Shown here: piece by piece, positions 24,700 through 45,661 of the stretch | Numbering within the stretch: the stretch's first letter is position 1 | How the letters are laid out: each line of letters starts with the position of its first letter | Assembly (NCBI RefSeq): GCF_001194135.2 | Contig: NC_068982.1 | Span: 72,180,906-72,230,375, forward strand | DNA length: 49,470 nucleotides | Direction of reading: 5' to 3' | Source: Octopus bimaculoides | Taxonomy: Eukaryota | Translations under genes and position numbers: made by a program | The notes under the pieces: model-generated | Database searches by the model: none | What the model saw: the letters and a program-made list of their open reading frames with translations, nothing else | Told to the model about the DNA's origin: nothing

Positions 24700-26802
24700 C
24701 ATACATACACACATGCCATATTTAAGATGCCCATTTTTTCCAGACAAATGTCTCCCCGCCAAAAATCACTCCTATATGTGAAAATTGGACTCTATACTCG
24801 AGTGCTTAAATACATTGAAAACTTTTTCTTCAATATGTGCTATTAAATTGGAGTGTGCTTTTATAGCATCAAATACAATGTGTGTGTATGTATATATATA
24901 TATATACAAACACACAACAGGTTTCCATTTACCAAATCCACTCTGGGGTATTCAAAACACTTGTAATGCCAAAGAGTGGTACCAAACCCATACCTGCGTC
25001 TATATATGTGTGTTTTGTAAATATCTAGCTCCTAAAGACAGCTCGTAGATTAGTCAATTCATAGTGTGCAAGAATTTTAAATGACACAATCTACTTCTAC
25101 CACTATCTTAAAAGAAATGTAAACATAAATGGCTCACTTTTTTTCTTCATAGTCAAACCGACGTCCGTAACGTTTACGGTGGAGTTCAATATGTTCGTTC
25201 TGCGGCTGAAATATTAAGAGAATTTAAAGGTTTTAAAAGAAACATTTTAACAAATTCAGTATAAATAGATGTTTGACATTACGTTAAACCAGGATTTGCA
25301 TATTTATTTTTAATATGGTCCAGTAAATTCAAATATTAAAATGCTAATCATTATTGTTTCGTTACAGAACAGCTTCTCCTTTATGATGAATGTGTGTTCA
25401 TAGCATTTGATTCATTAATCCAAGAGGCTCTGAAGCAACCCAGCGTTTCAACATCAATGTATCTCATCAGCCAGAGGCACTGATGAATATAAGACGAGCA
25501 TTGACTTGTGTTTATAACTTCAGTGAACTGTTTGTCGACCAATATTGATATCTGCCAACCGATATCATCATATGCACGGTGAACAACAAAAATCAAAACG
25601 TTCATGATTTATTACATTCGATGCCATTCAATTTAACATCAGGTTTATAGCAGTCCTATGCTAATCACGATACTCTTCCCAATTCTCCATGTATAACAGT
25701 ATGGAGCTTAACAGTTACAGAAAACATTGGAGTAGTAATTCCTTCATATTCCATAAAACTTCATTTGTTTAGCTGCACTCGTACAACTCACCTACATAGA
25801 TATAATTATTGGTTATGTTGAATGTCTGACCACCTTTGATTACCAACCCACCTGAGATCACTTTGGTTCAATGATACAAATACATTGTTTTAAAATGATC
25901 TAGAGTAAAATTCTTCAACAAAATCTTATGTTTGTTCTAAACACCAGATTAATAATGACAAAATTATTTTACAGAATTCATTATTTTCAAAATTAAGTGG
26001 AACACAGTATATTCCAACAGAAATATATATCCGACAGGGATCCACAGTTTCTGTCAACCCGATTTCTTTAACAGGGATTGTGTTGTCTTGACGCAATATC
26101 CAGACAATATTAATAGTAAATAATATTTTTATTGACACATAATTTTCGAAGTACACACATAATGAAGCGTAATAAAATACCTCGTTGTAAAAAACAACGG
26201 TAATTTCCTATTTGACGTGCTTAAATTTGAATTTGTTTGTTTCAATTTCAACTCGATTAACATGTCTTGTGGACACCCTGCTGCTCCTTGATTTATTGTG
26301 AATCCCAACGCAATACTTACAGATCAGCAGATACTCAATGAAAAGCATACAATTACGACACTGGCCCAATCTTTGTCAAACTCAGAGATTTGTAATTGCT
26401 TGGTATGCCTGCCGTGGATTGTAGTGCCCAGGGAAAAAACTCTATTCAAAATAAGTCTAACGTTTTTCCTCACTTTTTAATCGCTGTTCGCAGTGTGTAC
26501 TACTTATAATTATGAAATATTATATCGAAATAAACTTTTGGGATCACTATGATTTTACGAACGTCCAATAGGAAATTACCTAAACAAATAATTTCCTAAC
26601 ATAATAGGAAATGTAGCCATTATATACTTCTATAATATATTTGGCAGATACCAAAAGTTTTGGGGAAAATTGTTTAATGGAGTGTTTTGTATAAACCAAA
26701 TATCCACACGTGTCGACAAATATTTAACGATAATATAAACTCTTAAAGTATTCTATGATAATTAAATGGTGGAAATATTTTATTATAAACTTTACTTACC
26801 AT
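8885..26802 (-). CDS. NSA2: Ribosome biogenesis protein NSA2 homolog, complete spliced CDS (10 exons: 26800-26802, 25138-25205, 23372-23437, 22051-22104, 20783-20933, 19106-19190, 17307-17401, 13020-13160, 11474-11525, 8885-8952)
   Basis: Hand-spliced translation [30 protein letters not shown]...[18 protein letters not shown]...[41 protein letters not shown]...[45 protein letters not shown]...GCINAILLV* matches recalled NSA2 end to end. All introns are GT-AG, phases are consistent, total 783 nt (260 aa). Confidence 0.97.
10194..10575 (+). mobile_element. Full-length tRNA-derived SINE (family A)
   Basis: A box TGGCCCAGTGG, B box GGTTTCAATTCC, (CAA)n tail, TSD ATCAATTATA at 10184-10193 and 10576-10585. 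Confidence 0.9.
11474..11525 (-). CDS. NSA2: NSA2 exon 9 ([17 protein letters not shown])
   Basis: tttag|GTT ... G|gtaagt. Confidence 0.95.
12589..12637. repeat. (TA)n microsatellite. Others at about 2846-2879, 3315-3335, 8589-8617, 24660-24692, 32750-32790, 42065-42117, 49374-49420
   Basis: Directly visible. Confidence 0.95.
13020..13160 (-). CDS. NSA2: NSA2 exon 8 ([14 protein letters not shown]...TKGTIIE)
   Basis: cacag|GGT ... GAG|gtaagg; overlaps ORF 12963..13220. Confidence 0.96.
14335..14645 (-). mobile_element. Helentron/HINE-like non-autonomous element
   Basis: Terminal hairpin AATACCTCCG...CGGAGGTATT, internal GTTTGT repeats, other end GAGGTTTGCGCTCTCTG. Resembles recalled non-autonomous Helentron-type repeats; family assignment is from memory. 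Confidence 0.5.
14786..16774 (+). mobile_element. Internally deleted mariner element, interrupted by an RTE-tail insertion and an assembly gap
   Basis: Imperfect TIRs TACGAGGATGGCTGAAAAGTTCATAGGCTG / rc TACGAAGGTCAGCTGAAATGTTCAAAGGCTG with TA ends. HTH remnant [24 protein letters not shown]; C-terminal remnant [12 protein letters not shown]...GNYVEK*. Confidence 0.85.
17307..17401 (-). CDS. NSA2: NSA2 exon 7 ([31 protein letters not shown])
   Basis: tacag|AG ... ATG|gtaagt; overlaps ORF 17052..17435. Confidence 0.96.
17833..18170 (-). mobile_element. SINE family A copy
   Basis: Reverse complement of the 10194 copy, with small internal deletions. Confidence 0.85.
19106..19190 (-). CDS. NSA2: NSA2 exon 6 ([28 protein letters not shown])
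   Basis: ttcag|GGT ... A|gtaag. Confidence 0.95.
20783..20933 (-). CDS. NSA2: NSA2 exon 5 (IRMHE...KRKEKA)
   Basis: tatag|C ... GCT|gtaagt; overlaps ORF 20750..20965. Confidence 0.96.
22051..22104 (-). CDS. NSA2: NSA2 exon 4 ([17 protein letters not shown])
   Basis: cacag|G ... AC|gtatgt. Confidence 0.95.
23372..23437 (-). CDS. NSA2: NSA2 exon 3 ([21 protein letters not shown])
   Basis: ccccag|A ... AA|gtaagt. Confidence 0.93.
25138..25205 (-). CDS. NSA2: NSA2 exon 2 ([22 protein letters not shown])
   Basis: ttcag|CCG ... AA|gtgag. Confidence 0.95.
25370..26100 (+). mobile_element. Ancient, highly degenerate LINE reverse-transcriptase relic in NSA2 intron 1
   Basis: Frame-broken translation [14 protein letters not shown] / [11 protein letters not shown] / PFNLTSGL*Q / QGSTVSVN follows the order of RTE-like RT motifs (KAFDS..REAL, PEKL.NII.AL, PF.V.SGVRQG, YLGS.IS). 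Confidence 0.5.
26800..26802 (-). CDS. NSA2: NSA2 coding exon 1 (ATG only)
   Basis: Minus strand reads caaccaaacATG|gtaagt. The next exon starts in phase 0 with PQNEH and lacks its own Met. Confidence 0.8.
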
Positions 26803-26950: not shown

Positions 26951-29900
26951 TCACACATTATTATGGCGTCTGCTTGAAATTGCGTCAAACATACGTACAC
27001 ACACCCATGCAAACACGCACATATACAAAACTATCAGGGACCTATCTGCGGATGATGGATTTTCCAACAATAGCAGTAAAATCTGCCTCAAATTTAAACC
27101 TGCAATCTTAAAATAGAGTGTTACATTTGATAAAGCTGTTATAGATACACAATACCTCAATGAAAAAAAACGTAATGGCCGTAAGTGGAACACTTTTGAT
27201 CACAGATCTGCTCAATAAGGGCTAACTTTGGGTTAAACAATAACAACAACCCTTCTCATAGGTTTGCTCCATCAGGTAATTTTACATAGGCACCATAAAA
27301 AATTAGCAGAAGCATGGTATACAGCAGTTCAAATGAAGAAGATATTAGAATAAAAGGACGTATTCTAGAATCTTGTTGCTTAGTGTTTGACATTACGAGC
27401 TAAACCAAACAGGATACATTATATCATCATCATCATTTAATGTCCATATTCTATGTTGGGATTAGAGTCAAACAGTTCATCGGGATGCATTAGTCAGACA
27501 GCTGTGTCTATTTTGGCAAATTTTCTACAGCTTGGTGTCGTTCCTAATACCAAACCACTTTACAGAATGTACTGGGTGCAGTTTTTTTTCCATGGCACCA
27601 GCACTAATGAAGTCACAACATCATCATCATCATCATCGTCGTCGTTTAACGTCCGCTTTCCATGATAGCATGGGTTGGACGATTTGACTGAGGACTGGTG
27701 AAACCAGATGGCTACACCAGGCTCCAATCTGATTTGGCAGAGTTTCTACAGCTGGATGCCCTTCCTAACGCCAACCACTCAGAGAGTGTAGTGGGTGCTT
27801 TTTAGTGGCTAACTTTGGGTTAAACAATAACAACAACCCTTCTCATAGGTTTGCTCCATCAGAAGTGAACTTTATTTAAATTAACATGAATTTTTCTGCA
27901 ACATAGGTTATGTATATTATTGTACTTTACAGAAAATAAAAAAATTTCGAGCTGGCATGGCTGTATTGTAAGTAGCCTCCCTATCACATAGATCTGGGTT
28001 CACTCCCACTGCATGGCATCTTGTGCAGGTGTCTTCTACTGTTGCCTCAGGCCAACCAAAGCCTTGTGAGTGGGTTTGGTAGACGGAAACTCAAAGAAGA
28101 CCATCGTATATGTGTGTAAATGTGTGTGTGAGTGTGTGTGTGTGTTCACAACCACTGCTTGACAACTTGTGCCGGTGGCATGGGAACAAAACATTGGACT
28201 GATTCCTGTGCAGGTGGCACGTAAAATACACCATTTGAGGGTGGCCGTTGCCAGTACCGCCGGACTGGCCCTCGTGCCGGTGGTACGTAAAAAGCACCCA
28301 CTACACACTTGGAGCGGTTGGTGTTAGGAAGGGCATCCAGCTGTAGAAACTCTGCCAGATCAGATTGGAGTCTGGTGTAGCCATCTGGTTTCACCAGTCC
28401 TCAGTCAAATCACCCAACCTATGCTAGCATGGAAAGTGGACGTTAAATGATGAGGATGACTTAGTAGTGAGAGTGTTCAGCTTATTATCATAATGTCAGG
28501 GATTCGATTCTTGGACCAGGTTGTGTGTTATGCTTTGAGTATAGAACTTTATTTTAGGTTGTTCTAGTCTACCTTGTTATGACAAGTGCCAGCCCCCCCC
28601 TCTTACCAGCCAGTACATTGTTGACATCCTGCTTAGGCAAGGAGCTGGATGGGTGGCTATACCTTCTTGCATTTATATTTACATAGGCCCCATAAAAAAT
28701 TAGCAGAAGCATGGTATACAGCCCCCTTTTACTGAAGTTGGTCATTTCCTCTCCCTTAACTCTCCTCATCATATCATGTAACATTAACCAATGACATCTC
28801 AACCTTAGGCAATTTCTACAGTTGCATTTATTCTTCCTTTTTCCCAACTTACCATTCCTCAACACTTCTTCATTATATTCTCTACCTGTTTCCTTTAAGG
28901 TGGCAAACCAGCAGAAGTATTAGCAAGCCAGGCAGAACGCTTAGCAGCATTTTGTCCATCCTTATGTTCTGAATTCAAACTCCACCGAGGTTGATCTTGC
29001 TTTTCATCTTTTGGGATCGATAAATTAAGTATCACTGGGGTCGATGTAATCAACTAGTCCCCTCCCCCAAAATTTCATGCCTGTGCCTATAGTAGAAAGG
29101 ATTATATTCCCTGTCCCTCTTTCACCCATTCAAGCTCTACCCACCTACTACTTCCTATTCTCTTGGAGTGGTTGGTGTTAGAAAGGCTCCCCAGCTTACC
29201 AGTTTTCAGTCAAACCATTCAACCCATGCCAGCATAGAAAACGGATTTTAAACAATAATGATGACGAAGATGTTGACATCTGAGTAACATATTGTGACTT
29301 ATATAGCAGTATTGTCTGTGTCAAGGGTCTGAATATTCACACTATACATGTAGATACTTGTGAGTGTGTGCATGTGTACGCATTTGTATATGTGTAAACA
29401 GAAAAATCTAAATGCAGGTTTTATATATATATATATGTGTGTGTGTGTCAGTGCAAATGATTTATTCAGGAACTGCTTCATAGATCAGTGGTTCTCAACC
29501 AGGTTCCAAATACGATTTTATCATTAAAAATATATCTGTAATAAATTGGATTTACTTCTACAATACACAAAATATTTTTTAAAATGTTGTTTTCATAAAA
29601 TTCCTAATAATATTTAACTATAAAAATGATTTTTTAAACATTAAATGGCCACAAGGGTCTATCCAAGTAAAATAGAGACTAAAGGGACCCATGGGTAAAA
29701 ACCCTGCTATAGGCGGACCCCTTCCTGTTGTTTAACTCTTACTTGTTTTTGAGAGGTTGAGAAGCTTGCTTCCCAACCATGTAGTTCTGGGTTCAGTCCC
29801 ACAGCATGGCACCTTGGACAAGTGTCTTTAATTATAGGTTTTGAGCCAACCATAATCTCATAAGCAGAATTTGTTGGAACTATAAAAAAAAAAATCTTGA

Positions 29901-30572: not shown

Positions 30573-30754
30573 AGTGTGTATATATATAAAAAACAGGCTT
30601 CTTTCAGTTTCTGTCTACCAAATCCATTGACAAGGCACTGGTCAGCCCGATGCTGTAGTAGAAGACACTTGCTCAAGGTGTCACACAGTGGGACTGAACC
30701 CGGAACCATGTGACTGGGAAGCAATGCCATGCTTGCACCTCCCATTTAAATATA

Positions 30755-31743
30755 AAATGTATCTCATTCCAGGGTGAAAAACTGGAGGTAGTCGATAGCT
30801 TCCGCTATCTGGGCGACCAAGTTAGTAGTGGGGGTGGGTGCACTGAAAGTGTAGCTGCTAGAATAAGAATAGCCTGGGCAAAGTTTAGAGAGCTCTTACC
30901 CCTGCTGGCGACAAAGGGACTCTCACTCGGAGTAAAAGGCAGACTGTATGATGCATGCGTACGAACAGCCATGCTACATGGCAGTGAAACATGGGCTGTA
31001 ACTGCTGAGGACATACGTAAGCTCGCAAGGAATGAAGCCAGTATGCTCCGTTGGATGTGTAATGTCAATGTGAATACCCGTCAGAGTGTAAGTATCTTGA
31101 GAGAAAAGCTGAACANNNNNNNNNNNNNNNNNNNNNNNNNNNNNNNNNNNNNNNNNNNNNNNNNNNNNNNNNNNNNNNNNNNNNNNNNNNNNNNNNNNNN
31201 NNNNNNNNNNNNNNNNNNNNNNNNNNNNNNNNNNNNNNNNNNNNNNNNNNNNNNNNNNNNNNNNNNNNNNNNNNNNNNNNNNNNNNNNNNNNNNNNNNNN
31301 NNNNNNNNNNNNNNNNNNNNNNNNNNNNNNNNNNNNNNNNNNNNNNNNNNNNNNNNNNNNNNNNNNNNNNNNNNNNNNNNNNNNNNNNNNNNNNNNNNNN
31401 NNNNNNNNNNNNNNNNNNNNNNNNNNNNNNNNNNNNNNNNNNNNNNNNNNNNNNNNNNNNNNNNNNNNNNNNNNNNNNNNNNNNNNNNNNNNNNNNNNNN
31501 NNNNNNNNNNNNNNNNNNNNNNNNNNNNNNNNNNNNNNNNNGAGCGTGGCCGTTTTCGTGCGGGTGACACGTAAAAGCACCCACTACACTCTCTTAGTGG
31601 TTGGCGTTAGGAAGGGCATCCAGCTGTAGAAACTCTGCCAAATTAGATTGGAGCCTGGTGTTGCCATCCGGTTTCACCAGTCCTCAGTCAAATCGTCCAA
31701 CCCATGTTAGCATGGAAAGCGGACGTTAAACGATGATGATGAT
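30755..31743 (+). mobile_element. 5'-truncated RTE-clade LINE (RT C-terminus plus 3' tail), gap inside
   Basis: LEVVDSFRYLGDQVSSGGGC...RIRIAWAKFRELLP...KGRLYDACVRTAMLHGSETW...EASMLRWMC; tail ends ggaaagcggacgttaaacgatgatgatgat. Confidence 0.9.
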
Positions 31744-31929
31744 ATGCATTTGTGTATATGTCCATGTCTTTTCATGCCTGGCCATGGGGAAAATATTCCC
31801 TAGCTTGGAAATAGGTGAGGGGAGTGGAAACAAAATGAGCATCTGCCCTTTGAAATCCTACCTCAACAAATTGTGTCCCACCATTGCAAGTATGGAAAAG
31901 TAAATGTAAAAAGTAAAAAGGGAAACACT

Positions 31930-34476: not shown

Positions 34477-34625
34477 CTAGAATTTTTCTTCAGCATCAAG
34501 TATTTTACTCTGGTTCAGATCCTTGAAACGTTCAATGATGTTGACAATGCTATGTTCACCATGGACCTTGTTATCTCGGGTACGTACATTAGTAGTTAGA
34601 TTCTGCACCTCTTTCTCACCAACAA
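34477..34625 (-). CDS. TARS1: TARS last coding exon ([23 protein letters not shown]...AEEKF*)
   Basis: ttcag|TT ... TAG. Confidence 0.95.
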
Positions 34626-37600
34626 CTGAAATGAATATATTACAAATTAATGTTATTTATCATTAAAGGATAATTAATAACCCCAAACTACATTATCATA
34701 ATTAAGATTAATACACCCTCAAATAATAAATGAAATCAAATTATCTATATTATAAAGGATTAATTAAATGACCTGTCAAGGCAAGTGAAATCATAGTTGT
34801 GGCTGATGCCGGTGTTACACAACTGGCACCCATGCCAGCAGCACATAAAAAGCACCCACTACACTCTTGGAGTGGTTGGAGTTAGGAAGGGCATCCAGTC
34901 ATAGAATCCATGCAAATCAGATTGGAACCTGGTACAGCTCCCCAGCTGCCCAGTTTTCAGTCAAACCATCCAATCCATGCCAGCATGGAAAACAGATGTT
35001 AAATGATGATGATGATTATGTGTATTAATTGTATATTTCATCATCATCATCGTCGTTTAACGTCCGCTTTCCATGCTAGCATGGGTTGGACGATTTGACT
35101 GAGGACTGGTGAACGAGATGGCTACACCAGGCTCCAATCTGATTTGGCAGAGTTTCTACAGCTGGATGCCCTTCCCCAAGCCAACCACTCAGAGAGTGTA
35201 GTGGGTGCTTTTACATGTCACCCTTTTATTATAATTTTTTGAAGGACTACAAAGGAAAAGAAAAGGGCTCACAAATTCAAATGATTGTCCATTGACAGAA
35301 AGCTGAAAAGACTGAATATCACAGGCCAGAGGAAAATAAGACAATGGCAGTGAGCTCCAGAGAAGCAGCAGTTCAAATGAAGAAGATATTAGAATAAAAG
35401 GACGTATTCTAGAATCTTGTTGCTTAGTGTTTGACATTACGAGCTAAACCAAACAGGGTACATTATATCATCATCATCATTTAATGTCCATATTCTATGT
35501 TGGGATTAGAGTCAAACAGTTCATCAGGATGCATTAGTCAGACAACTGTGTCTATTTTGGCAAATTTTCTACAGCTTGGTGTCGTTCCTAATACCAAACC
35601 ACTTTACAGAATGTACTGGGTGCAGTTTTTTTTTTCCATGGCACCAGCACTAATGAAGTCACAACATCATCATCATCATCGTCGTCGTCGTTTAACGTCC
35701 GCTTTCCATGCTAGCATGGGTTGGACGATTTGACTGAGGACTGGTGAAACCAGATGGCTACACCAGGCTCCAATCTGAATTGGCAGAGTTTCTACAGCTG
35801 GATGCCCAACGCCAACCACTCAGAGAGTGTAGTGGGTGCTTTTTACGTGCCACCGGCACAAAGGCCAGTCAGGCGGTACTGGCAATGGCCACGCTCAAAA
35901 TGGTGTATTTTGTGTGCCACCCACACAAGAGCCAGTCCAGGGGCACTGGCAACGATCTCGCTCGAAAGTCCTTACACATGCCGCGGGCACAAAAGAAATT
36001 CTAACAGCTCTCAAGGTATATATTAAAAGATTAAGTATAGTGACAATTTTTACCATTAAAATCGTGTTCTGAAATCTTAGTGGAGAAATATTGGACTCAT
36101 CAGTCCTGCTGATGAATTTCATAAATTTTCTTAGTCACGTTAAAAGAAAAATATCATCATCTTTTAATGTCTGTTTCCATGTTAGCATGGGTTGGATGGT
36201 TTGACAAGAGCTGGCCAGCTTGAGGGCGACCCAGGCTAAAACAAAACAAACAACAATGTCCACTTACCAAATATGAAATTATATTGAGCCAACTGAGCAT
36301 TGCGGATTTTCTTGTTCATGGTAGTACCAGGATCTAAATCTACATCACATATAAACCCAGCATCATGAATTTGTTTGCTCACCTGTAAGGGATTCACAGA
36401 GAAGAGTAAAAGCTATTAAAAATCTCCATTTTACATACACAATAATGATTGCATTCATAGACACAGAATCCAATATTTTTTCTTTACTAGAATGTATACT
36501 TAATGGTATACATCTGTGTTAACTTTTAAACACCATTTGTGTTCACTTCTCTATGTCATCGTACCTAACCATTTCTGGTAACCTACTGGTTGATGAGCCT
36601 TGATTAAGAATCCTCATAACTAAATATATATATATATAAATGAGAATGAGTGCTCAACACCACACTGGTGGATAAAATTTCTTTATTTATATATTAAGGT
36701 TACCATTAGTTTCATGTTAAGAAAATATCATTATGTCTTAACAATTTTTCGAGCAGACACCATTCCTCCATGTGATCAGCTTGCTTGAAAAATTGTTAAG
36801 ATATTTTCTTAACATGAAACCAATGGTAGCCTTAAACAAATATGTGCGTGTTTGTGTGTATATGTATATATACAGACACACTTGGAAATGGATGTGTCAC
36901 ATTCAATTCAATAATAAATAATATACATACACACTGTTGAGAAGCAATCTCTTAACCACACAACCAATTTGATACAACCCCAATAAGGTATATAAAGACC
37001 ATATGATGATACAACAGGAAGAAACAAGCATCTTATGGTTGTTTTAATAGAAAAAAAAACATTATAAAACCAAACTACACTTACGAGTTGAGCATAATCA
37101 TCAAATGGTGGGGCAACAGGAACAACAATGGACTGGCGTGGAGAAAGCCAGAAAGGCCTGGAGATAGAGAAATAGAGAGATTATAGAGTCATAGAGTCTG
37201 GTTATATTTAATTCACATAAACTTGTCTATTAAACAAGTCAAAGATAGAAAATTGAGATAACACACACACAATGACTTCTATAGTTTCCATCCAACAAAC
37301 CTGCTCACAAGGCATTGGTTAGCCTCGGACTATAGAAGATCCTTACCCAAGGTTCCACAAAGTGAAACTGAATTTGATAGCACTTGGTTCTGAGCAAACC
37401 TCTAAACCACACAGTCATTCCTCTAGCATAGATATATATATTCAAATTTTAGATAAGCAACATCATCATGATTATCATTTAATGTCTATCTTCCATGCTG
37501 GCATGGGTTGGACGGTTTGACCAGAGCTGGTAAGCTGAGGGACTATACCAGACTCCAGTCTTATTTGGCATGATTTCTACAGCTGGATGCTCTTCCTAAT

Positions 37601-40600
37601 GCCAACTACTCCGAGAGTGTAATCGGTGCTTTTATGTGCTAGTTGCGTGACACCAGTATCTGCCATGACTAGGATACCACTTAGCTTGATGGGTCTTGTA
37701 CTCAAGTATGGCATATTATTGAAGGTCTCGGTCATTTGTCATTGTCTCCATGAGATCCAACGCCTGAAAGGTGCTTGCTATGTAACTACACATGCTGTTG
37801 GCGATTTCTTTTCCTTCTTTCGACTTTTCCCTTTCTCCTTTCTGATGAAGAGCTATGCTCAAAACATCAAACTCTTTCTTTCCCCTTAGCATCAAGCTAA
37901 TACATTCCTTGTGCACATCCTCTTGTTGTCCATTAAGTTCATTATTTGTCTTAATTCTAATTGATTGTTCATTTGAATTGACTATATATATCAGGGACTG
38001 GCTGATAACACTGTGATATCCAAGGTGAATGATGAATTGTGGGATATCGAACGCCCACTGGAAAAAGATTGCACCATCAAGTTTTTAAAATTTGATGATG
38101 ATGAAGGTAAAAATATCTGGTTTATTTATCTAAACAATTTCACTGTAGTCACAATATTTAACCCTTTAACATTTAAACTGGCTTTATCCAACCCAAATAT
38201 TTTACCTGTTTTATGTCCAAACCAACCAGGTCTGGCCTCTTACACTTACCCTACAATGTTATTCTAAAAGTATATAGTCACATCATTGACATCTCANNNN
38301 NNNNNNNNNNNNNNNNNNNNNNNNNNNNNNNNNNNNNNNNNNNNNNNNNNNNNNNNNNNNNNNNNNNNNNNNNNNNNNNNNNNNNNNNNNNNNNNNNNNN
38401 TTACATTTTGACAGAATAATCTGATTGCTAAAGGGTTAAATACAAAAAACTTGTTTATCGTTGCCAGTGCCCATGGACTGGCTCTTGTGCGGGTGGCACA
38501 TAAAATGCACCATTTTGAGCGTGGCCGTTGCCAGTGCCGCCTGACTGGCCTTTGTGCGGGTGACACGTAAAAGCACCCACTACACTCTCTGAGTGGTTGG
38601 CGTTAGGAAGGGCATCCAGCTGTAGAAACTCTGCCAAATCAGATTGGAGCCTGGTGTAGCCATCTGGTTTCACCAGTCCTCAGTCAAATCGTCCAACCCA
38701 TGCTAGCATGGAAAGCGGACGTTAAACGATGATGATGATATATACATACATACACTCTCTCTCAAACCATAGAGAAATAATAAAGACAAACAATAGATTC
38801 TACATTTCTATGAATATATGTTGAGAGCAAGAGACAGATTTTATGTGTTCAGAACTATTTCTCTTGTCTGTCTATATAATAAGGGGGGAAAAAAATCAAG
38901 TTGCTTTCTGTCTTGTCTGATGAAGAGACATAAACAGTTGTTTGAAAGACTAGCCGAAGTTTGTGCTGAAACTAATAAGTTGCATCACAGACCTCTCAGA
39001 TATTTGTATCCTTTTTATTTCGTGTTAATAAAATGAATCTAATAATGTAGAACAGTTTTCCACAACCCTTTTTCACTTGTAGTACACTTATATTTTTTTT
39101 CAAACTTTGACAGCATGCTTGAACGAAAAACAAAAAGTAAAAGTATAGGGAAAAAAATTATATTCAGGTTACACTGCAGCAAAACTGTGTGCTGCAGCAT
39201 ACTGGTTGCGAAGCATTGATGTAGAAAATGCATAATAGATTTACATTTCAATATTGATAAAAAAAAGAAAAGAAAAACTCAAAGATGTTTTTGCTGCTTA
39301 CCATTTCCCGGCATAGTTTTCACAAAGGATAGCAATCATTCTCTCAACAGAACCAAAAATAGCACGATGGACAATCACAGGCGTTTTCTTGTCACCACCT
39401 TCTCCACTAGAAGATAATCAGAAGAAATGAGATGACATGATGTAGATTGTTGTTAAAAACTGGACCATATCAAACACAATACGAATTCAAAAATGCCAGG
39501 ACTTGTGCCTCAGTGGGTAACTTTCTAGGTGTAATCCCGTGGTCATTCATGACTGAAGGGCATCTTTATAATGAAAGGGTAAAATACTGTGTTCATGAAA
39601 AGAAAATCATTAACTCTTTCATGGGTGGGTAATTAAAAATACCCAAATTTACAAATTGTTAGAATTGGTAATTTTTATAACCAGAAACCCTCTCTTCTTT
39701 TAACCATATGGGACATTATGAGCTGAAGTTATGGTCAGTAGTCCAGTACCTTAACCCCACAAGCAGTGTTTCTAAAGTGCTTTAAATAATGAAAGTAACT
39801 TTGAAACATGAAAAAAGGGCAGGGTTTCTCAAACTAGGGTACATGTACCTCTAGAGGTATATGAGAGAAAATATAGTAGAATGTGAGGTTTGTGAAAACC
39901 CTGGAATTCTGAAGTAATCATGAGCTATAAAATGCAACTTGTGTGTCTAGAAAATGCATGGGAAACTTTTTGCAGTTCCCATTGACTTATCTCAAAAAAT
40001 GAAGTATTCAGCAATGTTTACAACGAAAAACAAACTTTGTATCAATTGAGAATGATATGTGGCATATCTCTCTGAGTCACTTGTTGGAGAGAGAGAAAGC
40101 CAAGATAATCCAACTCATTAAAAATGTAATATTAAATTAAATGAACTTATTTTTAATTAAATGTTACATATAGGGGAGGAAACAACTGAATGTATTAATT
40201 CCACACAGATGAAAGGTAAAGCTGACCACGGCACAAGGCTTGAAATTTTGGGGGTAGGGAACAATTAAATTGACTCCAGCATTCGATTGGTATTTTATTT
40301 TGACCTCTGAAGGATGAAAGGCAAAACTGAGAGTGGCAGGATTTGAACTCATCAACATTATTGTTTAACATTTGTTTTCCATGCTGGCCAGTTCAACAGG
40401 ATCCAACCAACCAGAGGGCTGTACCAAACCCCAATGTCTGCTTTAGCATGGTTTCTATGACAGAATGTCCTTCTTAATGCCAACCATTTTACAGAATTTA
40501 ATGGATGCATTTTTCACAAGACAAGACTCCTCAACTCTTTACATGAAATTAAATTAATAACTAACAATATATGTTTACTGTTTGTTCTATGGTATCCAAC

Positions 40601-42064
40601 CATTTTATACTGTTTTCTTCACATTGAGTACACTAACATTGTTGGAACGATGAAAGGGTATGCCATAAGAAATACTTTGCGAACCTCTAAATTAACCCAT
40701 CAGCATTTGAATTGTCCATATGTGGCCCAAATATTCCGTCTGTTTTATGTTCAAACTGGCCAGATTCGGCATTTCACACCTACCCTACAATTACGTTCTA
40801 AAAATAAACAATCACATCATCAAGATCAAGAAGCTACGAGATAATGCATGATTAATTCAAAATGATGTGAATGCATAAGCAGTGCATTTGATAGAGTAAT
40901 CTGAATGCTAAATGGTTAAGGAACAACTAAAGGAGTGTGGAAAAGATTTGGATAACAAATGCACAGATTGAAACCTACCTGATATAAGAGAGATTGAATC
41001 GAAGAGGTAACTGAAAGTCAAGCTGGATAGTAGCACATTGGTGCGGCCGCTGTAACGCATCCAAGATTGTGATGTCAATCTACAAAGCAGGATATAATGG
41101 TAATATTAGCCCAAGAATAAGGAACATAGTCAGTGATTAATAAGCAAGTGATTATCATCATCATCATCATTGTTTAACGTCCGCTTTCCATGCTAGCATG
41201 GGTTGGACGATTTGACTGAGGACTGGTGAACCAGATGGCCACACCAGGCTCCAATCTGATTTGGCAGAGTTTCTACAGCTGGATGCTCTTCCTAACGCCA
41301 ACCACTCCAAGAGTGTAGTGGGTGCTTTTACGTGTCACCCGCACGAAGGCCAATCAGGCGGTACTGGCAACGGCCACGCTCAAAATGGTGTATGTTATGT
41401 GCCACCTGCACAAGAGCCAGTCCAGGGGCACTGGCAACGATCTCGCTCGAAAATCCTTACACATGTCACGGGCACAAGTGCCAGAAAAGTGACGNNNNNN
41501 NNNNNNNNNNNNNNNNNNNNNNNNNNNNNNNNNNNNNNNNNNNNNNNNNNNNNNNNNNNNNNNNNNNNNNNNNNNNNNNNNNNNNNNNNNNNNNNNNNNN
41601 NNNNNNNNNNNNNNNNNNNNNNNNNNNNNNNNNNNNNNNNNNNNNNNNNNNNNNNNNNNNNNNNNNNNNNNNNNNNNNNNNNNNNNNNNNNNNNNNNNNN
41701 NNNNNNNNNNNNNNNNNNNNNNNNNNNNNNNNNNNNNNNNNNNNNNNNNNNNNNNNNNNNNNNNNNNNNNNNNNNNNNNNNNNNNNNNNNNNNNNNNNNN
41801 NNNNNNNNNNNNNNNNNNNNNNNNNNNNNNNNNNNNNNNNNNNNNNNNNNNNNNNNNNNNNNNNNNNNNNNNNNNNNNNNNNNNNNNNNNNNNNNNNNNN
41901 NNNNNNNNNNNNNNNNNNNNNNNNNNNNNNNNNNNNNNNNNNNNNNNNNNNNNNNNNNNNNNNNNNNNNNNNNNNNNNNNNNNNNNNNNNNNNNNNNNNN
42001 NNNNNNNNNNNNNNNNNNNNNNNNNNNNNNNNNNNNNNNNNNNNNNNNNNNNNNNNNNNNNNNN

Positions 42065-42101
<37 letters not shown>

Positions 42102-45100
42102 ATATATATATATATAGGGAGAATTCACAAAAAAACAAGTTGAAGACAGGTGGTGTAGAAAACAAACAGATGTATTAGTATAACGCTTGGGAATTGAAAA
42201 AGTCTTTAATGTTTCGAGCCTATGCTCTTCCACGGAAAGAAACACGGAGAGAAAAAAAATGTGTGTAGAGGTTAGCGATCTAACATGGCGAAAATCAAAT
42301 ATATATATATAGATGCATTAAACAACATATCAAGTAAACAACAACTGAGGTATAAAAACAATATATAAAGGATGTTAAACATTCAAATTAAATTATCATC
42401 ATCATCGTTTAACGTCCGCTTTCCATGCTAGCATGGGTTGGATGATTTGACTGAGGACTGGTGAAACCGGATGGCAACACCAGGCTCCAATCTGATTTGG
42501 CAGATTATCTAATATACTGTGTATGTGTGCATGTGCACATGTATATATGGAAGGTATGGGTTCATGCCCCATAAGCAGCCTTCAACTTTTTTTTCATCCA
42601 AAAGGTTTTCTTAGCCCAATATCAACATTGCTATTATTTATAGCTTTCCACTGTCAAAAAAATAACAAAACTGATTTACTTCCTGTCTCTCAGAGTTTCT
42701 AAATTCACATGAAGTAAACAATACACATGCAATTTCTTTCATACTTCATCCTGTGATATACCTGGTCCGCACATCATCACCATCATGTGTTCTGGGGTCA
42801 TTTGCAATTTTGAGATCTTTCAACACTAAGAAGACCTTCACTCTGAAAACTCTGACAGAGTCAGCACACCAACATCTTTACCTTAATGCTACCTCAGCCC
42901 TTAAAGGGGGAAGACATACATTTTTTTTTTAAGACCAAATATTACTGATACATCTGACCTAAATAAACTCAATAGTCAACCACAAAAGCAATAACCCATT
43001 TTTTTGGAATTCTTAACTTAAATTTTCGAAGACGAGACCAAATGAGAATACACTTTCTAATTCAATGGACATTATTTTCTATAAAGCTAATAATAGTTAT
43101 AGTTTGCCAATTAAACACATGCATTATATATTTGGTCTTTACTTCAGCTCTATTATTAGTATTATTTTAGTTTCTTTGTCAAAGCGCTTTCATCACACAT
43201 CCTGTGACCTCATCAGTGACTCTCTATCCCACATATCTCCTTTAGTTCTGCTTATTCCATTTTGTCTTTCTGCAGTCTTGCAAAACAAATACATAAAAAT
43301 GTAAATATAGTGGTAAAAAAAAAAAAAAAAAAAGGAAAAACTAATCTACATCACTCCAAAGTTTAATTATTATTTTCTAAGCGAAACAAAATCCTAAAAT
43401 GTGGCTTCTTACCTTCTCAGCTTCATTCCACATCTCCAGCGCTCCCATATACTTCTCAGGTCGGGTGGATAGTTTTAGGTTAAACATAAACCCAAATATA
43501 CCATAAATATTCTTCAAGAAGTCTAAACAACCACTGATTTCTTCTTTTATCTAGAAAAAAGTAACAATATATTAAGTCATTAAGTTGTTTACTGTAACAT
43601 ATAATCCTTTCTACTACAGGCACAAGGCCTGAAATTTGAGGGCAGGGGATAGTCAATTATATCGACCCCAGTGCTCAACTGGTACTTATTTTATCAAGGA
43701 TGAAAGGTAAAGTCAACCCTGGCGGAATTTGAACTCAGAACATGAAGACCAACGAAATGCTGCTAAGCATTTCACCCGGCATGCTAATGGTTCTGCCAGC
43801 TCACTGCCTTACAGTAATATATAATGACTACACATCAGAGAGAGTACACAACTTTGTTGGTAATGGGCCATCCAGGGTTTCAATATATGGCAAGGAACTA
43901 TTCACATTAGTATGTGTTCCCAGGGAAGACTTACTCTTATCGACTCATTTATTAATTTCAGGCTCTGGATGCTGGCCATGCTGGGGTACTGACTTGAAGA
44001 GTTTAGTCTAATAAATATATTTTAAACCTGGCATTTATTCTGACAAACCAACCCTATTGTAGTGTTAGTGAGGGAGAAACAAAGATTAAAACACACTCAT
44101 ACATATATACATGTACACATATGATGGGTTTCTACACAGTTTCCATCTACTAAATTCACTTGCAAGATACTGGCTGATCTAGGGGTATAGGTGAAAACAC
44201 TTGTCCAGGGTACCAAACAGTGGGACTGAAACCAAAACCATTTGGTTGCGAAGTTAACTACATCATACAGCCATACCTGCACCTTGTCAAGAAACGTTTA
44301 CATATCCCACATCCATCCTTTGAAGCCAACTCATCTTATTGGTTTTAGATCCATACCTGATCCTGTCGGCAAAATATATGGGCATCATCTTGTTGAAACC
44401 TCCTGACTCTCGTTAGGCCACTCAAAGCTCCAGACAGTTCATTTCGATGAAGGACACCAAAATCGGCAAGCCTGAGTGGTAGTTCTTTCCATGATCTTGG
44501 TCGATGATCAAACATCAAACTGCAAAAATATAAACAGATATATTAGCTTTGTAAAGTTACAGAAACTACTATTAAAAGTAATTTTTTTCTATTTTTTCTT
44601 TTATTCTTTTAACTGTTTAACCCATTACCTCCTATAATTCTATTAACTGGAATTTTTTTAATGAAACTTTGATTTCTAGCATAAAACAGCCTTAGAAACA
44701 CGCTGGAATGATCAAAATAACATTTTAAATAGAAATGAACGAGATATTGGGTGAAAAATTAGCAAACCGCATTTGAATATCAGAGAAATATACCTAGTAG
44801 ATATAGCAAAAAGGTTAGATATGTGTAAATATTGACAGATAATTACGAAATTTGTAATTTTTAAGTGATCTCATATGAGATCACTGGTAGGTAATGGGTT
44901 AAGTCACTGGACTGCACTCACACTAGGGCACTCCTTGAAGGCTTTTAGTCAAACAAATTGAACCCAAAGCTTTTATTTTAAGTTTAGAGTGGCTGTGTGA
45001 TTGAGAAGTTTGCTCCCCAACCAGATGGTTTTCAAAGTTCAGTTCCACTGTGTGGTACCCTGAACAAGTGTCTTCTCTTATAGCTCCAAGCTGACCAAAG

Positions 45101-45661
45101 CCTTGTGAATGGATCTGGCAGATGGAAACTAAAAGAAGCCTGTTGTATATATGTGTCTCTTTGACATCAAGTGATTGTTGTAAATGAATGTCAGTAATAT
45201 CCAATATTCTACTAAAATATGTCTGGCCATGGTGGAAATATTACCTTGTTTGGAAACAGGTGAAGGTTGGTGACAGGAAGGGCATCCAACCGTAGAAAAT
45301 CTGCCTCAATAAATTCCATCTGATCCAATGCAAGGATGGAGAAGTGGATGATGATGACAGCAAATAGGCAGTGGTTGTATATACACAAAAGAAATAGAAT
45401 GTATGTGTATGCACGATCTCAATTTGTTAACAAGTCCCTTGTCAAGCTTGCATGCAAAGGTAGGTTTTCACAAGAACAACATCACTCATAAAAATCACTA
45501 AATCAATTTGTCACCTCTTTTCAAGGATTCCATTCTGCATGTATTTTATTAGACGATGACCATGTCACAGTTTAAAGAACAATAACTTACCAATGGCCAG
45601 GGCAGTTCATTGGTTTCAGAGCAAATGTTTCTTTCTCAGATTGAAATGAGAACATATTCTC
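34477..45661 (-). CDS. TARS1: Threonyl-tRNA synthetase, cytoplasmic-type, 3' part (exons 45591-45661, 44357-44519, 43413-43550, [missing ~26 aa exon], 40979-41079, 39302-39406, 37085-37157, 36268-36382, 34477-34625); 5' exons not seen in window
   Basis: Hallmark ThrRS motifs: [112 protein letters not shown]...AEEKF*. GT-AG boundaries, phases consistent. Confidence 0.96.
36268..36382 (-). CDS. TARS1: TARS exon ([10 protein letters not shown]...AQYNFIF)
   Basis: tacag|GTG ... G|gtaagt; anticodon-binding domain. Confidence 0.95.
37085..37157 (-). CDS. TARS1: TARS exon ([24 protein letters not shown])
   Basis: tccag|G ... CTC|gtaagt. Confidence 0.95.
37995..38106 (+). CDS. Isolated ThrRS TGS-domain exon on the plus strand ([37 protein letters not shown]), antisense to the surrounding TARS gene
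   Basis: Open frame that matches the recalled eukaryotic ThrRS TGS segment ([19 protein letters not shown]). Bounded by atcag| and |gtaaaa. No other plus-strand ThrRS exon found by eye. Confidence 0.8.
39302..39406 (-). CDS. TARS1: TARS exon ([34 protein letters not shown])
   Basis: tctag|T ... TG|gtaag. Confidence 0.95.
40686..40918 (-). mobile_element. TTAA-flanked MITE (piggyBac-like ends). Related copies at about 22198-22419(+), 38158-38438(-), 45807-46004(+)
   Basis: Ends follow TTAACCC.T.AGCATT ... AATGCTAAA.GGTTAA; shared interior sequence; no ORF. Confidence 0.7.
40979..41079 (-). CDS. TARS1: TARS exon ([33 protein letters not shown])
   Basis: tgtag|ATT ... AG|gtagg. Confidence 0.95.
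41155..41494 (-). mobile_element. RTE 3'-tail copy. Further copies at about 15160-16530(-), 19597-19870(-), 27625-27805(-), 28200-28460(+), 34800-35015(+), 35037-35220(-), 35660-35985(-), 37465-37650(-), 38455-38740(+), 42395-42505(-), 46195-46345(-)
   Basis: Shared atcatcatcatcgtttaacgtccgctttccatgctagcatgggttggacg... sequence is the reverse complement of the LINE tail at 31550-31743. Confidence 0.88.
42119..42300 (-). mobile_element. Penelope-like terminal-repeat relic beside (TA)n; related relic at about 13198-13350
   Basis: Minus strand GAAGAGCATAGGCTCGAAAC hammerhead-like stem; abuts a TA microsatellite; similar sequence at 13200-13320. Confidence 0.45.
43413..43550 (-). CDS. TARS1: TARS exon ([13 protein letters not shown]...WNEAEK)
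   Basis: tctag|ATA ... AAG|gtaag. Confidence 0.95.
44357..44519 (-). CDS. TARS1: TARS exon ([10 protein letters not shown]...[11 protein letters not shown])
   Basis: tgcag|T ... CAG|gtatgg. Confidence 0.96.
44617..44902. mobile_element. Second TTAA-flanked MITE type
   Basis: TTAA|CCCATTACCT ... AGGTAATGGG|TTAA. Confidence 0.65.
45591..45661 (-). CDS. TARS1: TARS exon ([23 protein letters not shown])
   Basis: tacag|GAG ... TG|gtaagt. Confidence 0.95.

What the first reader, a model, noticed from the sequence alone, without database searches (positions are those of the whole stretch)
37995..38106. Intact ThrRS TGS-domain exon lying antisense inside a TARS intron
An N-terminal ThrRS exon ([37 protein letters not shown]) with open frame and AG/GT ends is on the + strand, between two C-terminal TARS exons on the - strand. 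It belongs upstream of 45661 and in the opposite orientation. No N-gap separates it from the minus-strand exon at 37085-37157. Options: (a) misjoin at the RTE tail (37465-37650) or near the 104-N gap; (b) a real inverted duplication or transposition of one exon; (c) part of a second, oppositely oriented ThrRS paralogue or an antisense transcript able to pair with TARS mRNA. The sequence fits ThrRS better than the MRPL39 TGS domain (recalled comparison).
Basis: partly seen in the sequence, partly recalled or inferred. Interest (0 to 1): 0.7.

Follow-up and report, generated by a model that had tools for sequence, protein, structure and literature searches.

The report
Inverted second copy of TARS1 exon 4
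The antisense ThrRS exon is a second, identical copy of exon 4 of the octopus threonyl-tRNA synthetase gene, copied with part of its intron and a SINE into a later intron of the same gene; it is most likely a young by-product of retroelement activity, not a working exon, a paralogue or a simple misplacement.

Summary
Window 37995-38106 (+) translates as stated and lies inside a minus-strand TARS1 intron.

- **Source.** The window is Octopus bimaculoides (GCA_001194135.2, 100% identity).
- **Two copies.** That assembly carries the exon twice: the normal collinear exon 4, about 21.7 kb upstream and outside the window, and this inverted copy.
- **Extent.** The copy spans 37991-38739: all of exon 4, about 300 nt of intron 4 (a 104-N gap sits inside), and a 5'-truncated SINE.
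- **Ends.** It ends at the SINE's (GAT)n tail.
- **Insertion site.** It sits in a (TA)n microsatellite. That site is empty in O. sinensis, and in O. vulgaris it lacks any exon copy. Argonauta also has a single exon 4.
- **Best reading (0.5).** A lineage-specific retro-duplication in which RTE-type machinery copied TARS1 pre-mRNA from the intronic SINE tail (5' transduction or template switch).
- **Rivals.** SINE-homology DNA repair (0.22), short-read assembly artefact (0.2), functional exon or paralogue (0.03).
- **Not tested.** The copy and exon 4 would pair as a long inverted repeat within the pre-mRNA.

Reads or PCR across the two junctions would settle whether the insertion is real.

The parts
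37991..38106 (+). Complete copy (116 nt) of TARS1 coding exon 4, which encodes the C-terminal half of the TGS domain. It is antisense to the host gene, has no native acceptor upstream, and keeps the native donor downstream.
   Evidence: The translation is and the Pfam TGS hit. It is 100% identical to L004 25005-25120. The true exon start was fixed from the exon 3 donor and the reading frame.
38107..38296 (+). Copy of the first 190 nt of TARS1 intron 4, starting at the donor GTAAAA. From about 38157 it holds the left part of an old MITE-like repeat that is also present in the O. sinensis and O. vulgaris intron 4.
   Evidence: It belongs to the 306-nt block that is 100% identical to L004 25005-25310, and is 96.4% identical to O. 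sinensis and O. vulgaris intron 4.
38297..38400 (.). Assembly gap of 104 N inside the duplicated segment. The source has 51 bp here (L004 25311-25361).
38401..38456 (+). Copy of 56 nt of unique intron 4 sequence lying just upstream of the intron-4 SINE.
   Evidence: Within the O. bimaculoides locus it matches only L004 25362-25417, and it is contiguous with the SINE in both copies.
38457..38739 (+). 5'-truncated SINE (283 nt) ending in a (GAT)4 tail. It is cut at the same 5' nucleotide as the SINE in intron 4.
   Evidence: It is 97.9% identical to L004 25418-25700. Three rare states are shared by copy and source alone, or nearly so (one of nine other copies carries one of them), and there are 6 differences, at 5 of which the copy has the family consensus base. 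Other family members continue further 5'.
37983..37990 (.). Left half of the target (TA)n microsatellite. Its end is a candidate target-site duplication (ATATA).
38740..38744 (.). Right half of the target microsatellite (ATATA), a candidate target-site duplication of 1-5 nt.
37157..39300 (-). Host intron 17 of TARS1, between the exons encoding aa 569-603 and 604-629 of P0155. It is collinear with the O. sinensis and O. vulgaris intron on both sides of the insertion.
34480..45661 (-). 3' half of TARS1, coding exons 12-20. Exons lie at about 45593-45661, 44354-44536, 43395-43550, 40981-41079, 39301-39405, 37079-37156, 36269-36382 and 34480-34635. Exon 15 is hidden in the N gap 41495-42064.
   Evidence: tblastn with P0155 and the alignment of RefSeq models.

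Best explanation
**What it is**
- The segment 37991-38739 is a real insertion specific to the O. bimaculoides lineage.
- It is a partial copy of the gene's own pre-mRNA: exon 4, the first ~300 nt of intron 4, and the 5'-truncated SINE that sits sense-oriented in intron 4.
- It was inserted in inverted orientation about 21.7 kb downstream, into a (TA)n microsatellite of intron 17.

**How it most likely arose**
- The reverse transcriptase and endonuclease of an RTE-type LINE nicked the (TA)n tract and primed at a SINE (GAT)n tail.
- It then copied back through the SINE into the flanking intron and exon of TARS1 RNA.
- It either started directly on the pre-mRNA (5' transduction) or started on a free SINE RNA and switched to the homologous SINE embedded in the nascent pre-mRNA.
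- Synthesis ended at the first nucleotide of exon 4.

**What it does**
- The copy is not a functional exon. It has no acceptor and no partner exons on its strand. It looks intact only because it is young.

**Shown versus inferred**
- Shown: the two copies, their exact limits, the site that is empty in O. sinensis and lacks any exon copy in O. vulgaris, and the lineage-specific truncated source SINE.
- Inferred: the RNA intermediate, the enzyme, and that the junctions exist in the animal and not only in the assembly.
For: 1. **Two copies in one assembly.** Window 37991-38296 equals L004 25005-25310 (306/306). Window 38401-38739 matches L004 25362-25700 (98.2%), in the same internal order as the source.
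2. **The insertion site has no exon copy in relatives.** The joined flanks align to a continuous intron with a (TA)n tract in O. sinensis (empty site). In O. vulgaris the site holds only that species' own 120-bp SINE fragment and no exon copy. Each of the three relatives, including Argonauta, has one collinear exon 4.
3. **The right end is a retroelement feature.** It coincides with the SINE 3' tail, which is shorter than in the source ((GAT)4 against about (GAT)5). The source sequence beyond the tail is not copied. Two other family copies of 20 in the locus also have (TA)n directly after the tail. O. vulgaris has an independent SINE insertion 11 nt away.
4. **The left end is an RNA feature.** It falls on exon 4 nucleotide 1, with a 1-nt ambiguity. 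A random breakpoint would land there with a chance of roughly 0.5% or less.
5. **The source SINE needs a host transcript.** It is sense to TARS1, is itself 5'-truncated so presumably lacks its own Pol III promoter (not checked), and is absent from O. sinensis and O. vulgaris. It could be transcribed only as part of TARS1 pre-mRNA.
6. **The left junction is unique-to-unique.** It joins unique intron sequence to unique exon sequence inside a contig. No repeat at that junction could cause a graph misjoin.
7. **The machinery is active.** An RTE LINE shows recent, polymorphic insertions in O. bimaculoides (PMC9115989). Transduction of flanking DNA is established for L1 and SVA (PMC10681720).
Against: - **Uneven differences.** Differences between copy and source are unevenly spread: 0 in 362 nt of unique sequence and 6 in 283 nt of SINE. 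At 5 of the 6 the copy carries the family consensus base. A simple one-step copy followed by neutral drift gives p of about 0.01. The pattern needs a template switch, gene conversion or repeat assembly noise.
- **No known RNA with this 5' end.** No known RNA species starts at an exon's first nucleotide while keeping the downstream intron. The exon-start coincidence points to RNA but remains unexplained.
- **Target-site duplication unproven.** The insertion lies in a microsatellite, so a duplication of 1-5 nt is only possible, not shown.
- **The LINE partner is inferred.** It was not identified here.
- **One short-read assembly.** All O. bimaculoides sequence seen comes from a single short-read assembly, with a gap inside the insert. 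No independent contigs were found.
Confidence: 0.5

Rival explanations
1. DNA-level templated repair. A SINE already sat at the (TA)n site of intron 17. A break at or in its 5' part was repaired by strand invasion into the homologous, oppositely oriented SINE in intron 4. Synthesis (SDSA, BIR or MMBIR) ran about 415 nt past the homology into intron 4 and exon 4, and the end was then joined to the other side of the break.
For: - It explains the mosaic SINE. The 3' part (positions 131-272) is consensus-like and lacks four private variants of the source. The 5' part shares three rare variants with the source.
- It explains why the right junction looks like an ordinary SINE insertion next to (TA)n.
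- The site has also taken up a SINE on its own in O. vulgaris.
- Template and target lie 21.7 kb apart on the same chromosome.
Against: - It offers no reason for the copy to stop at the first nucleotide of exon 4.
- Positions 80 and 91 differ inside the supposedly converted tract.
- No allele or species with only a SINE in this orientation at this site was seen. O. sinensis is empty, and the O. vulgaris insert is in the opposite orientation.
Confidence: 0.22
2. Artefact of the 2015 short-read assembly. The genome has one exon 4, and the inverted copy was created during contig building, scaffolding or gap closing in a repeat-rich, gap-rich region. A real SINE may sit at the site.
For: - The v2 chromosome assembly only re-scaffolded the published shotgun assembly with Hi-C (PMC9068888).
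- A 104-N gap lies inside the insert, and nine gaps lie in the window.
- The right junction runs through a young, high-copy SINE, and the copy's SINE is consensus-like.
- The window holds a clear gap-edge duplication: 14950-15173 equals 15943-16166, 100%.
- Perfect identity of 306 nt is what a re-used read pool would give.
- The relatives checked, in three other assemblies, have one copy.
Against: - The left junction joins unique intron 17 sequence to unique exon 4 sequence with only a (TA)4 between them. The (TA)n upstream of the real exon 4 is separated from it by 29 nt that are absent here. No shared repeat could mislead a k-mer or read walk, so reads containing this junction must exist.
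- Two separate contig ends, on either side of the gap, are each collinear with the source and each carries one junction.
- An artefact would not be expected to start at an exon boundary and end at a SINE tail.
Confidence: 0.2
3. Functional element: part of a second, oppositely oriented ThrRS paralogue, or an exon of an antisense transcript kept by selection.
For: - The reading frame is open and the donor site is intact.
- The sequence is perfectly complementary to TARS1 exon 4.
Against: - It is the only ThrRS exon on that strand in 60 kb.
- It has no native acceptor.
- No gene is called on that strand.
- It is absent from O. sinensis, O. vulgaris and Argonauta.
- Identity extends equally into intron and SINE, so the open frame reflects youth, not constraint.
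Confidence: 0.03

Closest known systems
5' (and 3') transduction of flanking sequence by non-LTR retrotransposons (human LINE-1 and SVA)
   Same: - A stretch of unique DNA next to a source element is copied with it to a new site, so the source locus can be named. Both 5' and 3' transductions are documented, and SVA 'borrows' host-gene transcription (PMC10681720).
- Here the transduced flank is exon 4 plus intron 4, and the source is the intron-4 SINE. The insert ends in the element's tail, and the site carries no such insert in relatives.
   Different: - The element is a 5'-truncated SINE with a (GAT)n tail rather than a poly(A) element, and the partner is presumably an RTE-type LINE.
- The insertion is back into the same gene, 21.7 kb away.
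- The 5' end lies on an exon boundary.
- The SINE part is a mosaic.
- The target-site duplication is unclear.
SVA exon trapping and retrotransposon-mediated exon shuffling
   Same: A host exon is carried to a new genomic place through a retroelement transcript (cited in PMC10681720).
   Different: In exon trapping the upstream exons are spliced onto the element, so introns are lost. Here intron 4 is retained and nothing is spliced.
Chimeric retrocopies made by reverse-transcriptase template switching (such as U6-L1 chimeras); from general knowledge, not checked here
   Same: One cDNA is built from two RNA templates. This would explain a consensus-like SINE 3' part joined to a source-like 5' part plus flank.
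   Different: The switch here would occur within homologous SINE sequence onto a nascent pre-mRNA. No direct evidence for it exists.
Intronic editing-complementary sequences (ECS), and inverted repeats that drive ADAR editing or back-splicing; from general knowledge
   Same: An intronic sequence that is perfectly complementary to an exon of the same pre-mRNA (116 nt of exon, 306 nt in all, then a further ~339 nt at 98%).
   Different: Classical ECS elements lie in the adjacent intron, are imperfect and are conserved. This one lies 13 introns away, is perfect, and occurs in one species. No editing data were found.
Processed pseudogene or retrocopy
   Same: An RNA-derived copy of gene sequence is the favoured origin.
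   Different: It is not processed. It keeps intron sequence, covers one exon only, and ends in a SINE tail rather than at the mRNA's 3' end.

Membership tests
TARS1 (cytoplasmic ThrRS) exon 4 / TGS domain | The sequence encodes the TGS domain and matches ThrRS. | tested here: met
   Pfam PF02824 hit, E=2.3e-7, above the cut-off. It is 37/37 aa identical to P0155 and 116/116 nt identical to the collinear exon 4.
TARS1 (cytoplasmic ThrRS) exon 4 / TGS domain | It is a usable exon: a native 3' splice site upstream, and neighbouring exons on the same strand. | tested here: not met
   Upstream lies (TA)n intron 17 sequence rather than ttttcag. No other ThrRS exon lies on that strand.
Non-LTR retrotransposition with 5' transduction | The insert ends at the 3' tail of a retroelement, and the source's downstream flank is not copied. 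| tested here: met
   Homology to the source stops within the (GAT)n tail: (GAT)4 in the copy against about (GAT)5 followed by GAC in the source.
Non-LTR retrotransposition with 5' transduction | An identifiable source element with the same 5' flank, lying sense inside a transcribed unit. | tested here: met
   The source is L004 25005-25700, with its SINE sense to TARS1 and truncated at the same 5' nucleotide.
Non-LTR retrotransposition with 5' transduction | An empty site in related genomes. | tested here: met
   The O. sinensis intron is continuous across the site. O. vulgaris lacks this insert but has its own small SINE insert 11 nt away.
Non-LTR retrotransposition with 5' transduction | A target-site duplication flanking the insert. 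| tested here: inconclusive
   The insert lies inside (TA)n. A duplication of 1, 3 or 5 nt (ATATA) restores a perfect microsatellite, but this cannot be proved.
Non-LTR retrotransposition with 5' transduction | An active autonomous partner whose tail the SINE shares. | not testable with these tools
   Recent RTE activity in this species is reported (PMC9115989). In the window a LINE-like ORF fragment (recognised by eye; Pfam found no family) is followed, after an N gap, by the same 3' domain and (GAT)4 tail. The link is hidden by the gap.
Processed retrocopy | Introns are removed. | tested here: not met
   About 300 nt of intron 4 are retained, contiguous with the exon.
Assembly misjoin | Breakpoints lie at N gaps or in repeats shared by the two joined regions. 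| tested here: inconclusive
   The right junction runs through a high-copy SINE. The left junction is unique-to-unique with no gap. Reads were not available.
Second ThrRS paralogue on the + strand | Further ThrRS exons on the same strand, and divergence from TARS1. | tested here: not met
   There is a single + strand hit in the window and a single inverted hit in L004, with 100% nt identity to TARS1 exon 4.
Editing-complementary sequence / inverted-repeat dsRNA | Complementarity to an exon within one transcript. | tested here: met
   L004 25005-25310 pairs with 46744-46439 (100%), and 25362-25700 with 46334-45996 (98.2%). Both arms lie inside the TARS1 transcription unit.
Editing-complementary sequence / inverted-repeat dsRNA | Editing, or back-splicing, that depends on the pairing. 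| not tested
   No ThrRS entry was found in the held supplementary files of PMC8382921. No RNA-seq could be examined.

The most novel reading that the evidence does not exclude
The insertion is real and has created a new intronic editing-complementary sequence. The antisense copy in intron 17 would pair with exon 4 (116 nt perfect, up to about 650 nt if intron 4 is still present) within TARS1 pre-mRNA. That pairing could make the TGS-domain exon an ADAR hyper-editing target, or promote back-splicing of exons 5-17, in O. bimaculoides only. It would be a caught-in-the-act example of SINE/LINE activity seeding new RNA-editing substrates in cephalopods. The start at an exon's first nucleotide could also point to an unrecognised RNA template class for reverse transcription.
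Probability: 0.1. Interest if true: 0.7.

Novelty: new member of a known kind. Interest (0 to 1): 0.35.

Why it matters
If real, this is a dated, source-identified case of a retroelement moving a coding exon within a mollusc genome. The event is younger than the O. bimaculoides / O. vulgaris split, put at 13-33 My in PMC13282606. Transduction-type exon shuffling is documented mainly for primate L1 and SVA.

It also places a perfect inverted repeat of a coding exon inside the pre-mRNA of an essential housekeeping gene, in an animal group known for heavy A-to-I editing. That makes a testable natural experiment.

On the practical side, the exon must not be annotated as a gene, a paralogue or an antisense exon. 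Read mapping to TARS1 exon 4 in this assembly will be ambiguous between the two copies. If it is an artefact, it marks a local error carried over into the chromosome-scale O. bimaculoides reference.

Tried and rejected
- **First protein search.** A 190-aa exon concatenate returned only fragments of 333 aa or less and no cephalopod.
- **Second protein search.** I used a chimeric probe: human TARS1 recalled from memory, with the window's own exons substituted in. It served only to fish out full-length proteins and returned the Octopus protein P0155.
- **Exact-product look-ups that found nothing.** P0155 and P0250 were not on record. Their cluster mates P0241 and P0348 were.
- **Search for independent O. 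bimaculoides contigs.** Three look-ups found nothing, so read-level support could not be obtained. Two ORFs spanned the junctions and one lay inside the copy.
- **Editing data for ThrRS.** One paper was not held, and the held supplements of another had no entry.
- **The 2015 genome paper.** It could not be opened. That it used Meraculous is my recollection only.
- **Misjoin via (TA)n, rejected.** The source has a (TA)9 tract upstream of exon 4, but 29 nt lie between it and the exon, and those 29 nt are missing in the copy.
- **Junction through the GGACTGGCT motif, rejected.** Exon 4 and the SINE share this 9-mer, but the TCAG preceding it in the copy is exon sequence, not SINE sequence.
- **Lariat intermediate, circRNA or exon 3-4 spliced RNA as template, rejected.** None predicts a cDNA end at the first nucleotide of exon 4 followed directly by target DNA.
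- **MRPL39 origin.** This is moot given 100% nucleotide identity to TARS1.
Full report
**1. The observation**

Window 37995-38106 (+) translates without a stop to [37 protein letters not shown]. The peptide hits Pfam TGS above the curated cut-off (E=2.3e-7). It is identical to residues 103-139 of the cytoplasmic ThrRS of Octopus vulgaris/sinensis, P0155.

A tblastn of P0155 against the window finds nine exon matches:
- Eight lie on the minus strand, running from 45661 down to 34480 and covering residues 385-714.
- One lies on the plus strand, at 37986-38123.

The plus-strand match sits between the minus-strand exons at 39301-39405 and 37079-37156. No N run lies between it and the latter. The description is correct and is not a chance match.

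**2. Where the window comes from**

The window is 100% identical to Octopus bimaculoides chromosome CM046602.1 of GCA_001194135.2. I fetched this region as locus L004, in which TARS1 is on the + strand and the window is its reverse. The window's private residues ([29 protein letters not shown]) are those of the O. bimaculoides RefSeq proteins.

That assembly is the 2015 shotgun assembly re-scaffolded with Hi-C (PMC9068888). Local sequence is therefore short-read sequence.

**3. It is a second copy, not a misplaced one**

In L004 the TGS exon occurs twice:
- As the collinear coding exon 4 at 25005-25120 (+), outside the window.
- As the inverted copy at 46744-46629, which is window 37991-38106.

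The O. bimaculoides RefSeq models include the exon in its normal place.

Each relative checked has exactly one copy, collinear with the gene. These are the chromosome-level assemblies of O. sinensis (L001) and O. vulgaris (L002) and the Argonauta hians assembly (L003). That L001 and L002 are long-read assemblies is my recollection; one search gives only accessions and contig lengths. No hit falls in the orthologous downstream intron, by protein or by nucleotide search.

**4. Exact anatomy of the copy**

Matches between copy and source, in the same order and orientation:
- Window 37991-38296 is 306/306 identical to L004 25005-25310.
- After the 104-N gap, where the source has 51 bp, window 38401-38739 matches L004 25362-25700 at 98.2%.

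The copy therefore holds, in order:
- All of exon 4.
- The first 190 nt of intron 4.
- The assembly gap.
- 56 nt more of unique intron 4.
- A 283-nt SINE ending in (GAT)4.

Left end:
- The copy starts at window 37991.
- In the functional gene, exon 3 ends ...GGAATCAG|gtaagg and exon 4 starts after ...tatttttcag|TCAGGGACTGG. AG+T makes Ser101 and CAG makes Gln102. The same holds in O. sinensis, O. vulgaris and Argonauta.
- The copy therefore begins at the first nucleotide of the true exon, give or take 1 nt, because the target (TA)n could also supply the T.
- The native acceptor and polypyrimidine tract are not part of the copy. The native donor GTAAAA is.

Right end:
- Homology stops inside the SINE's (GAT)n tail.
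- The source continues GATGAC TACTTCAT..., whereas the copy continues with intron 17 sequence.

**5. The insertion site**

Left of 37991 and right of 38739 lies ordinary TARS1 intron 17. Window 38738-39300 aligns to the adjoining O. sinensis sequence (88.5%).

Joining the two flanks gives a sequence that aligns to a continuous O. sinensis intron, with the junction inside a (TA)n microsatellite. A target-site duplication of 1, 3 or 5 nt (ATATA) would restore a perfect microsatellite, but it cannot be proved.

O. vulgaris carries an independent 120-bp SINE fragment 11 nt away, in the opposite orientation. The spot has thus taken up a SINE on its own in a second species.

**6. The source SINE**

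- The SINE in intron 4 is sense to TARS1.
- It is absent from the orthologous place in O. sinensis and O. vulgaris.
- It is itself 5'-truncated. Five other copies in the locus continue upstream with shared sequence (...GGATTTTCGAGCGAG|ATCGTTGCC).
- A truncated SINE presumably lacks its own Pol III promoter, which I did not check. It would then reach RNA only as part of TARS1 pre-mRNA.
- The family is young: pairs of copies in this locus reach 99.6% identity.
- Three of 20 copies, this one included, have (TA)n directly after the tail.
- An RTE LINE with recent, polymorphic insertions is reported for O. bimaculoides (PMC9115989).
- The window shows a LINE-like ORF fragment at 30710-31115, recognised by eye only; Pfam found no family for it. 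After an N gap it is followed by the same 3' domain and (GAT)4 tail. This fits a shared tail but does not prove one.

**7. What made it**

The right limit is a retroelement tail and the left limit is an exon boundary. Both are features of RNA and retroelements, not of random DNA breakpoints. Together they would be very unlikely by chance, of the order of 1e-4 by a rough estimate.

My best explanation is target-primed reverse transcription at a nick in the (TA)n tract:
- The enzyme primed on a SINE tail.
- It copied back through the SINE into intron 4 and exon 4 of TARS1 RNA.
- This is a 5' transduction in the sense established for L1 and SVA (PMC10681720).

One result complicates the simplest version:
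- All 6 differences between copy and source lie in the SINE. None lies in the 362 nt of unique sequence.
- At 5 of the 6 the copy has the family consensus base and the source a private base.
- Copy and source share three rare states at SINE positions 17, 51 and 97, found in at most one of nine other copies.
- The pattern is a mosaic, source-like in the 5' part and consensus-like in the 3' part.

Three readings fit the mosaic:
- (a) Reverse transcription began on a free SINE RNA and switched to the homologous SINE in nascent TARS1 pre-mRNA.
- (b) A SINE already sat at the site, and a break was repaired from the intron-4 SINE as template, with synthesis running on into the flank (SDSA or MMBIR).
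- (c) Base calls in a high-copy repeat are noisy in a short-read assembly.

I cannot separate these. The exon-start end favours an RNA route, but I know of no RNA that begins at an exon's first nucleotide and still carries the next intron. I considered lariat intermediates, circular RNAs and exon 3-4 spliced RNA, and none predicts this junction. It stays unexplained.

**8. Could it be an artefact?**

Points for an artefact:
- The region is gap-rich, and a gap lies inside the insert.
- The right junction runs through a repeat.
- The window contains at least one plain gap-edge duplication: 14950-15173 equals 15943-16166.
- Perfect identity is what re-used reads would give.

Points against:
- The left junction joins unique intron 17 sequence to unique exon 4 sequence across only (TA)4.
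- The (TA)9 tract upstream of the real exon 4 is separated from it by 29 nt that are missing here. No shared repeat could mislead a k-mer graph or a read walk, so reads carrying this junction should exist.
- The two contig ends on either side of the gap each carry one junction and are each collinear with the source. This is the picture expected when a true two-copy segment is partly closed from both sides.

I put the artefact at about 0.2. I could not find independent O. bimaculoides contigs.

**9. What it does**

On its own strand it is almost certainly nothing:
- It has no acceptor and no partner exons.
- No gene is called on that strand.
- It has no conservation.
- Identity to the source runs equally through intron and SINE, so the open frame reflects youth and not selection.

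Within the TARS1 pre-mRNA it creates a long inverted repeat:
- 306 nt are perfect, of which 116 are exon 4.
- A further 339 nt pair at 98%.
- The two arms lie 21.7 kb apart, one in exon 4 / intron 4 and the other in intron 17.

By general knowledge, such duplexes are ADAR substrates, and inverted repeats in flanking introns promote back-splicing, here of exons 5-17. Nothing was tested, and I found no editing data for this gene.

**10. Comparison and verdict**

It works like a retrotransposon-mediated transduction and passes most membership tests for one:
- Met: the tail end, the named source with its flank, sense orientation in a transcribed unit, and the empty site in relatives.
- Open: the target-site duplication and the LINE partner.

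It is not a processed retrocopy, because the intron is retained. It is not a paralogue and not a usable exon.

Novelty is modest. It is a new member of a known kind, in an unusual host, with an odd exon-boundary start. Interest is 0.35. It would rise if reads confirm the junctions and species-specific editing of exon 4 is found.

Noticed in passing
window 41495-42064 (N gap); L004 33534-35264 (N gap, outside the window): TARS1 coding exon 15 (aa 509-535) is hidden in the 570-N gap. The O. bimaculoides RefSeq models therefore read on past exon 14 into intron ([10 protein letters not shown]) and are 670-672 aa instead of about 714-718. Exon 11 (aa 352-384) is likewise missing, presumably in the upstream gap.
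   Followed up: partly
window 14950-15173 and 15943-16166: A 224-bp 100% identical direct duplicate. Its second copy starts at the first base after the N gap 15436-15942. It looks like overlapping contig ends left unmerged (a spurious gap) or a tandem repeat.
   Followed up: no
L002 38626-38745 (O. vulgaris), orthologous to window ~37980: O. vulgaris has its own 5'-truncated SINE fragment of about 120 bp, inserted 11 nt from the O. bimaculoides insertion point in the opposite orientation. O. sinensis is empty. The (TA)n site has thus taken insertions twice, independently.
   Followed up: partly
window 30710-31115 and 31542-31746: A LINE-like ORF fragment (...GRLYDACVRTAMLHGSETW...; recognised by eye, and Pfam found no family) is followed, after a 426-N gap, by the same 3' domain and (GAT)4 tail as the SINE family. 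This suggests that SINE and LINE share a tail, but the link is hidden by the gap.
   Followed up: partly
window 27322-27807 and 35366-35849: A 489-bp direct duplicate at 97.1% identity, made of the SINE 3' part plus about 310 bp beyond the tail with the same downstream flank. It is either a composite repeat or a 3'-flank transduction.
   Followed up: no
window 38157-38296 and 38401-38450 (and L004 25171-25411): An old MITE-like repeat with inverted ends (AACCCTTTAAC ... TAAAGGGTTAAAT) in intron 4. It is also present in O. sinensis and O. vulgaris, and diverged copies lie elsewhere in the locus. The 104-N gap of the copy falls inside it.
   Followed up: no
window 37991-38003 vs 38473-38482: Exon 4 starts with TCAGGGACTGGCT. 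It shares the 9-mer GGACTGGCT with a motif that recurs in the SINE 5' region. I considered this as a possible template-switch point and found that it does not explain the junction.
   Followed up: partly
(tool behaviour): With a 190-aa query the protein search listed only targets of 333 aa or less, about 1.75 times the query length. Full-length ThrRS proteins appeared only with a query of about 680 aa. Short exon concatenates may miss full-length relatives.
   Followed up: no
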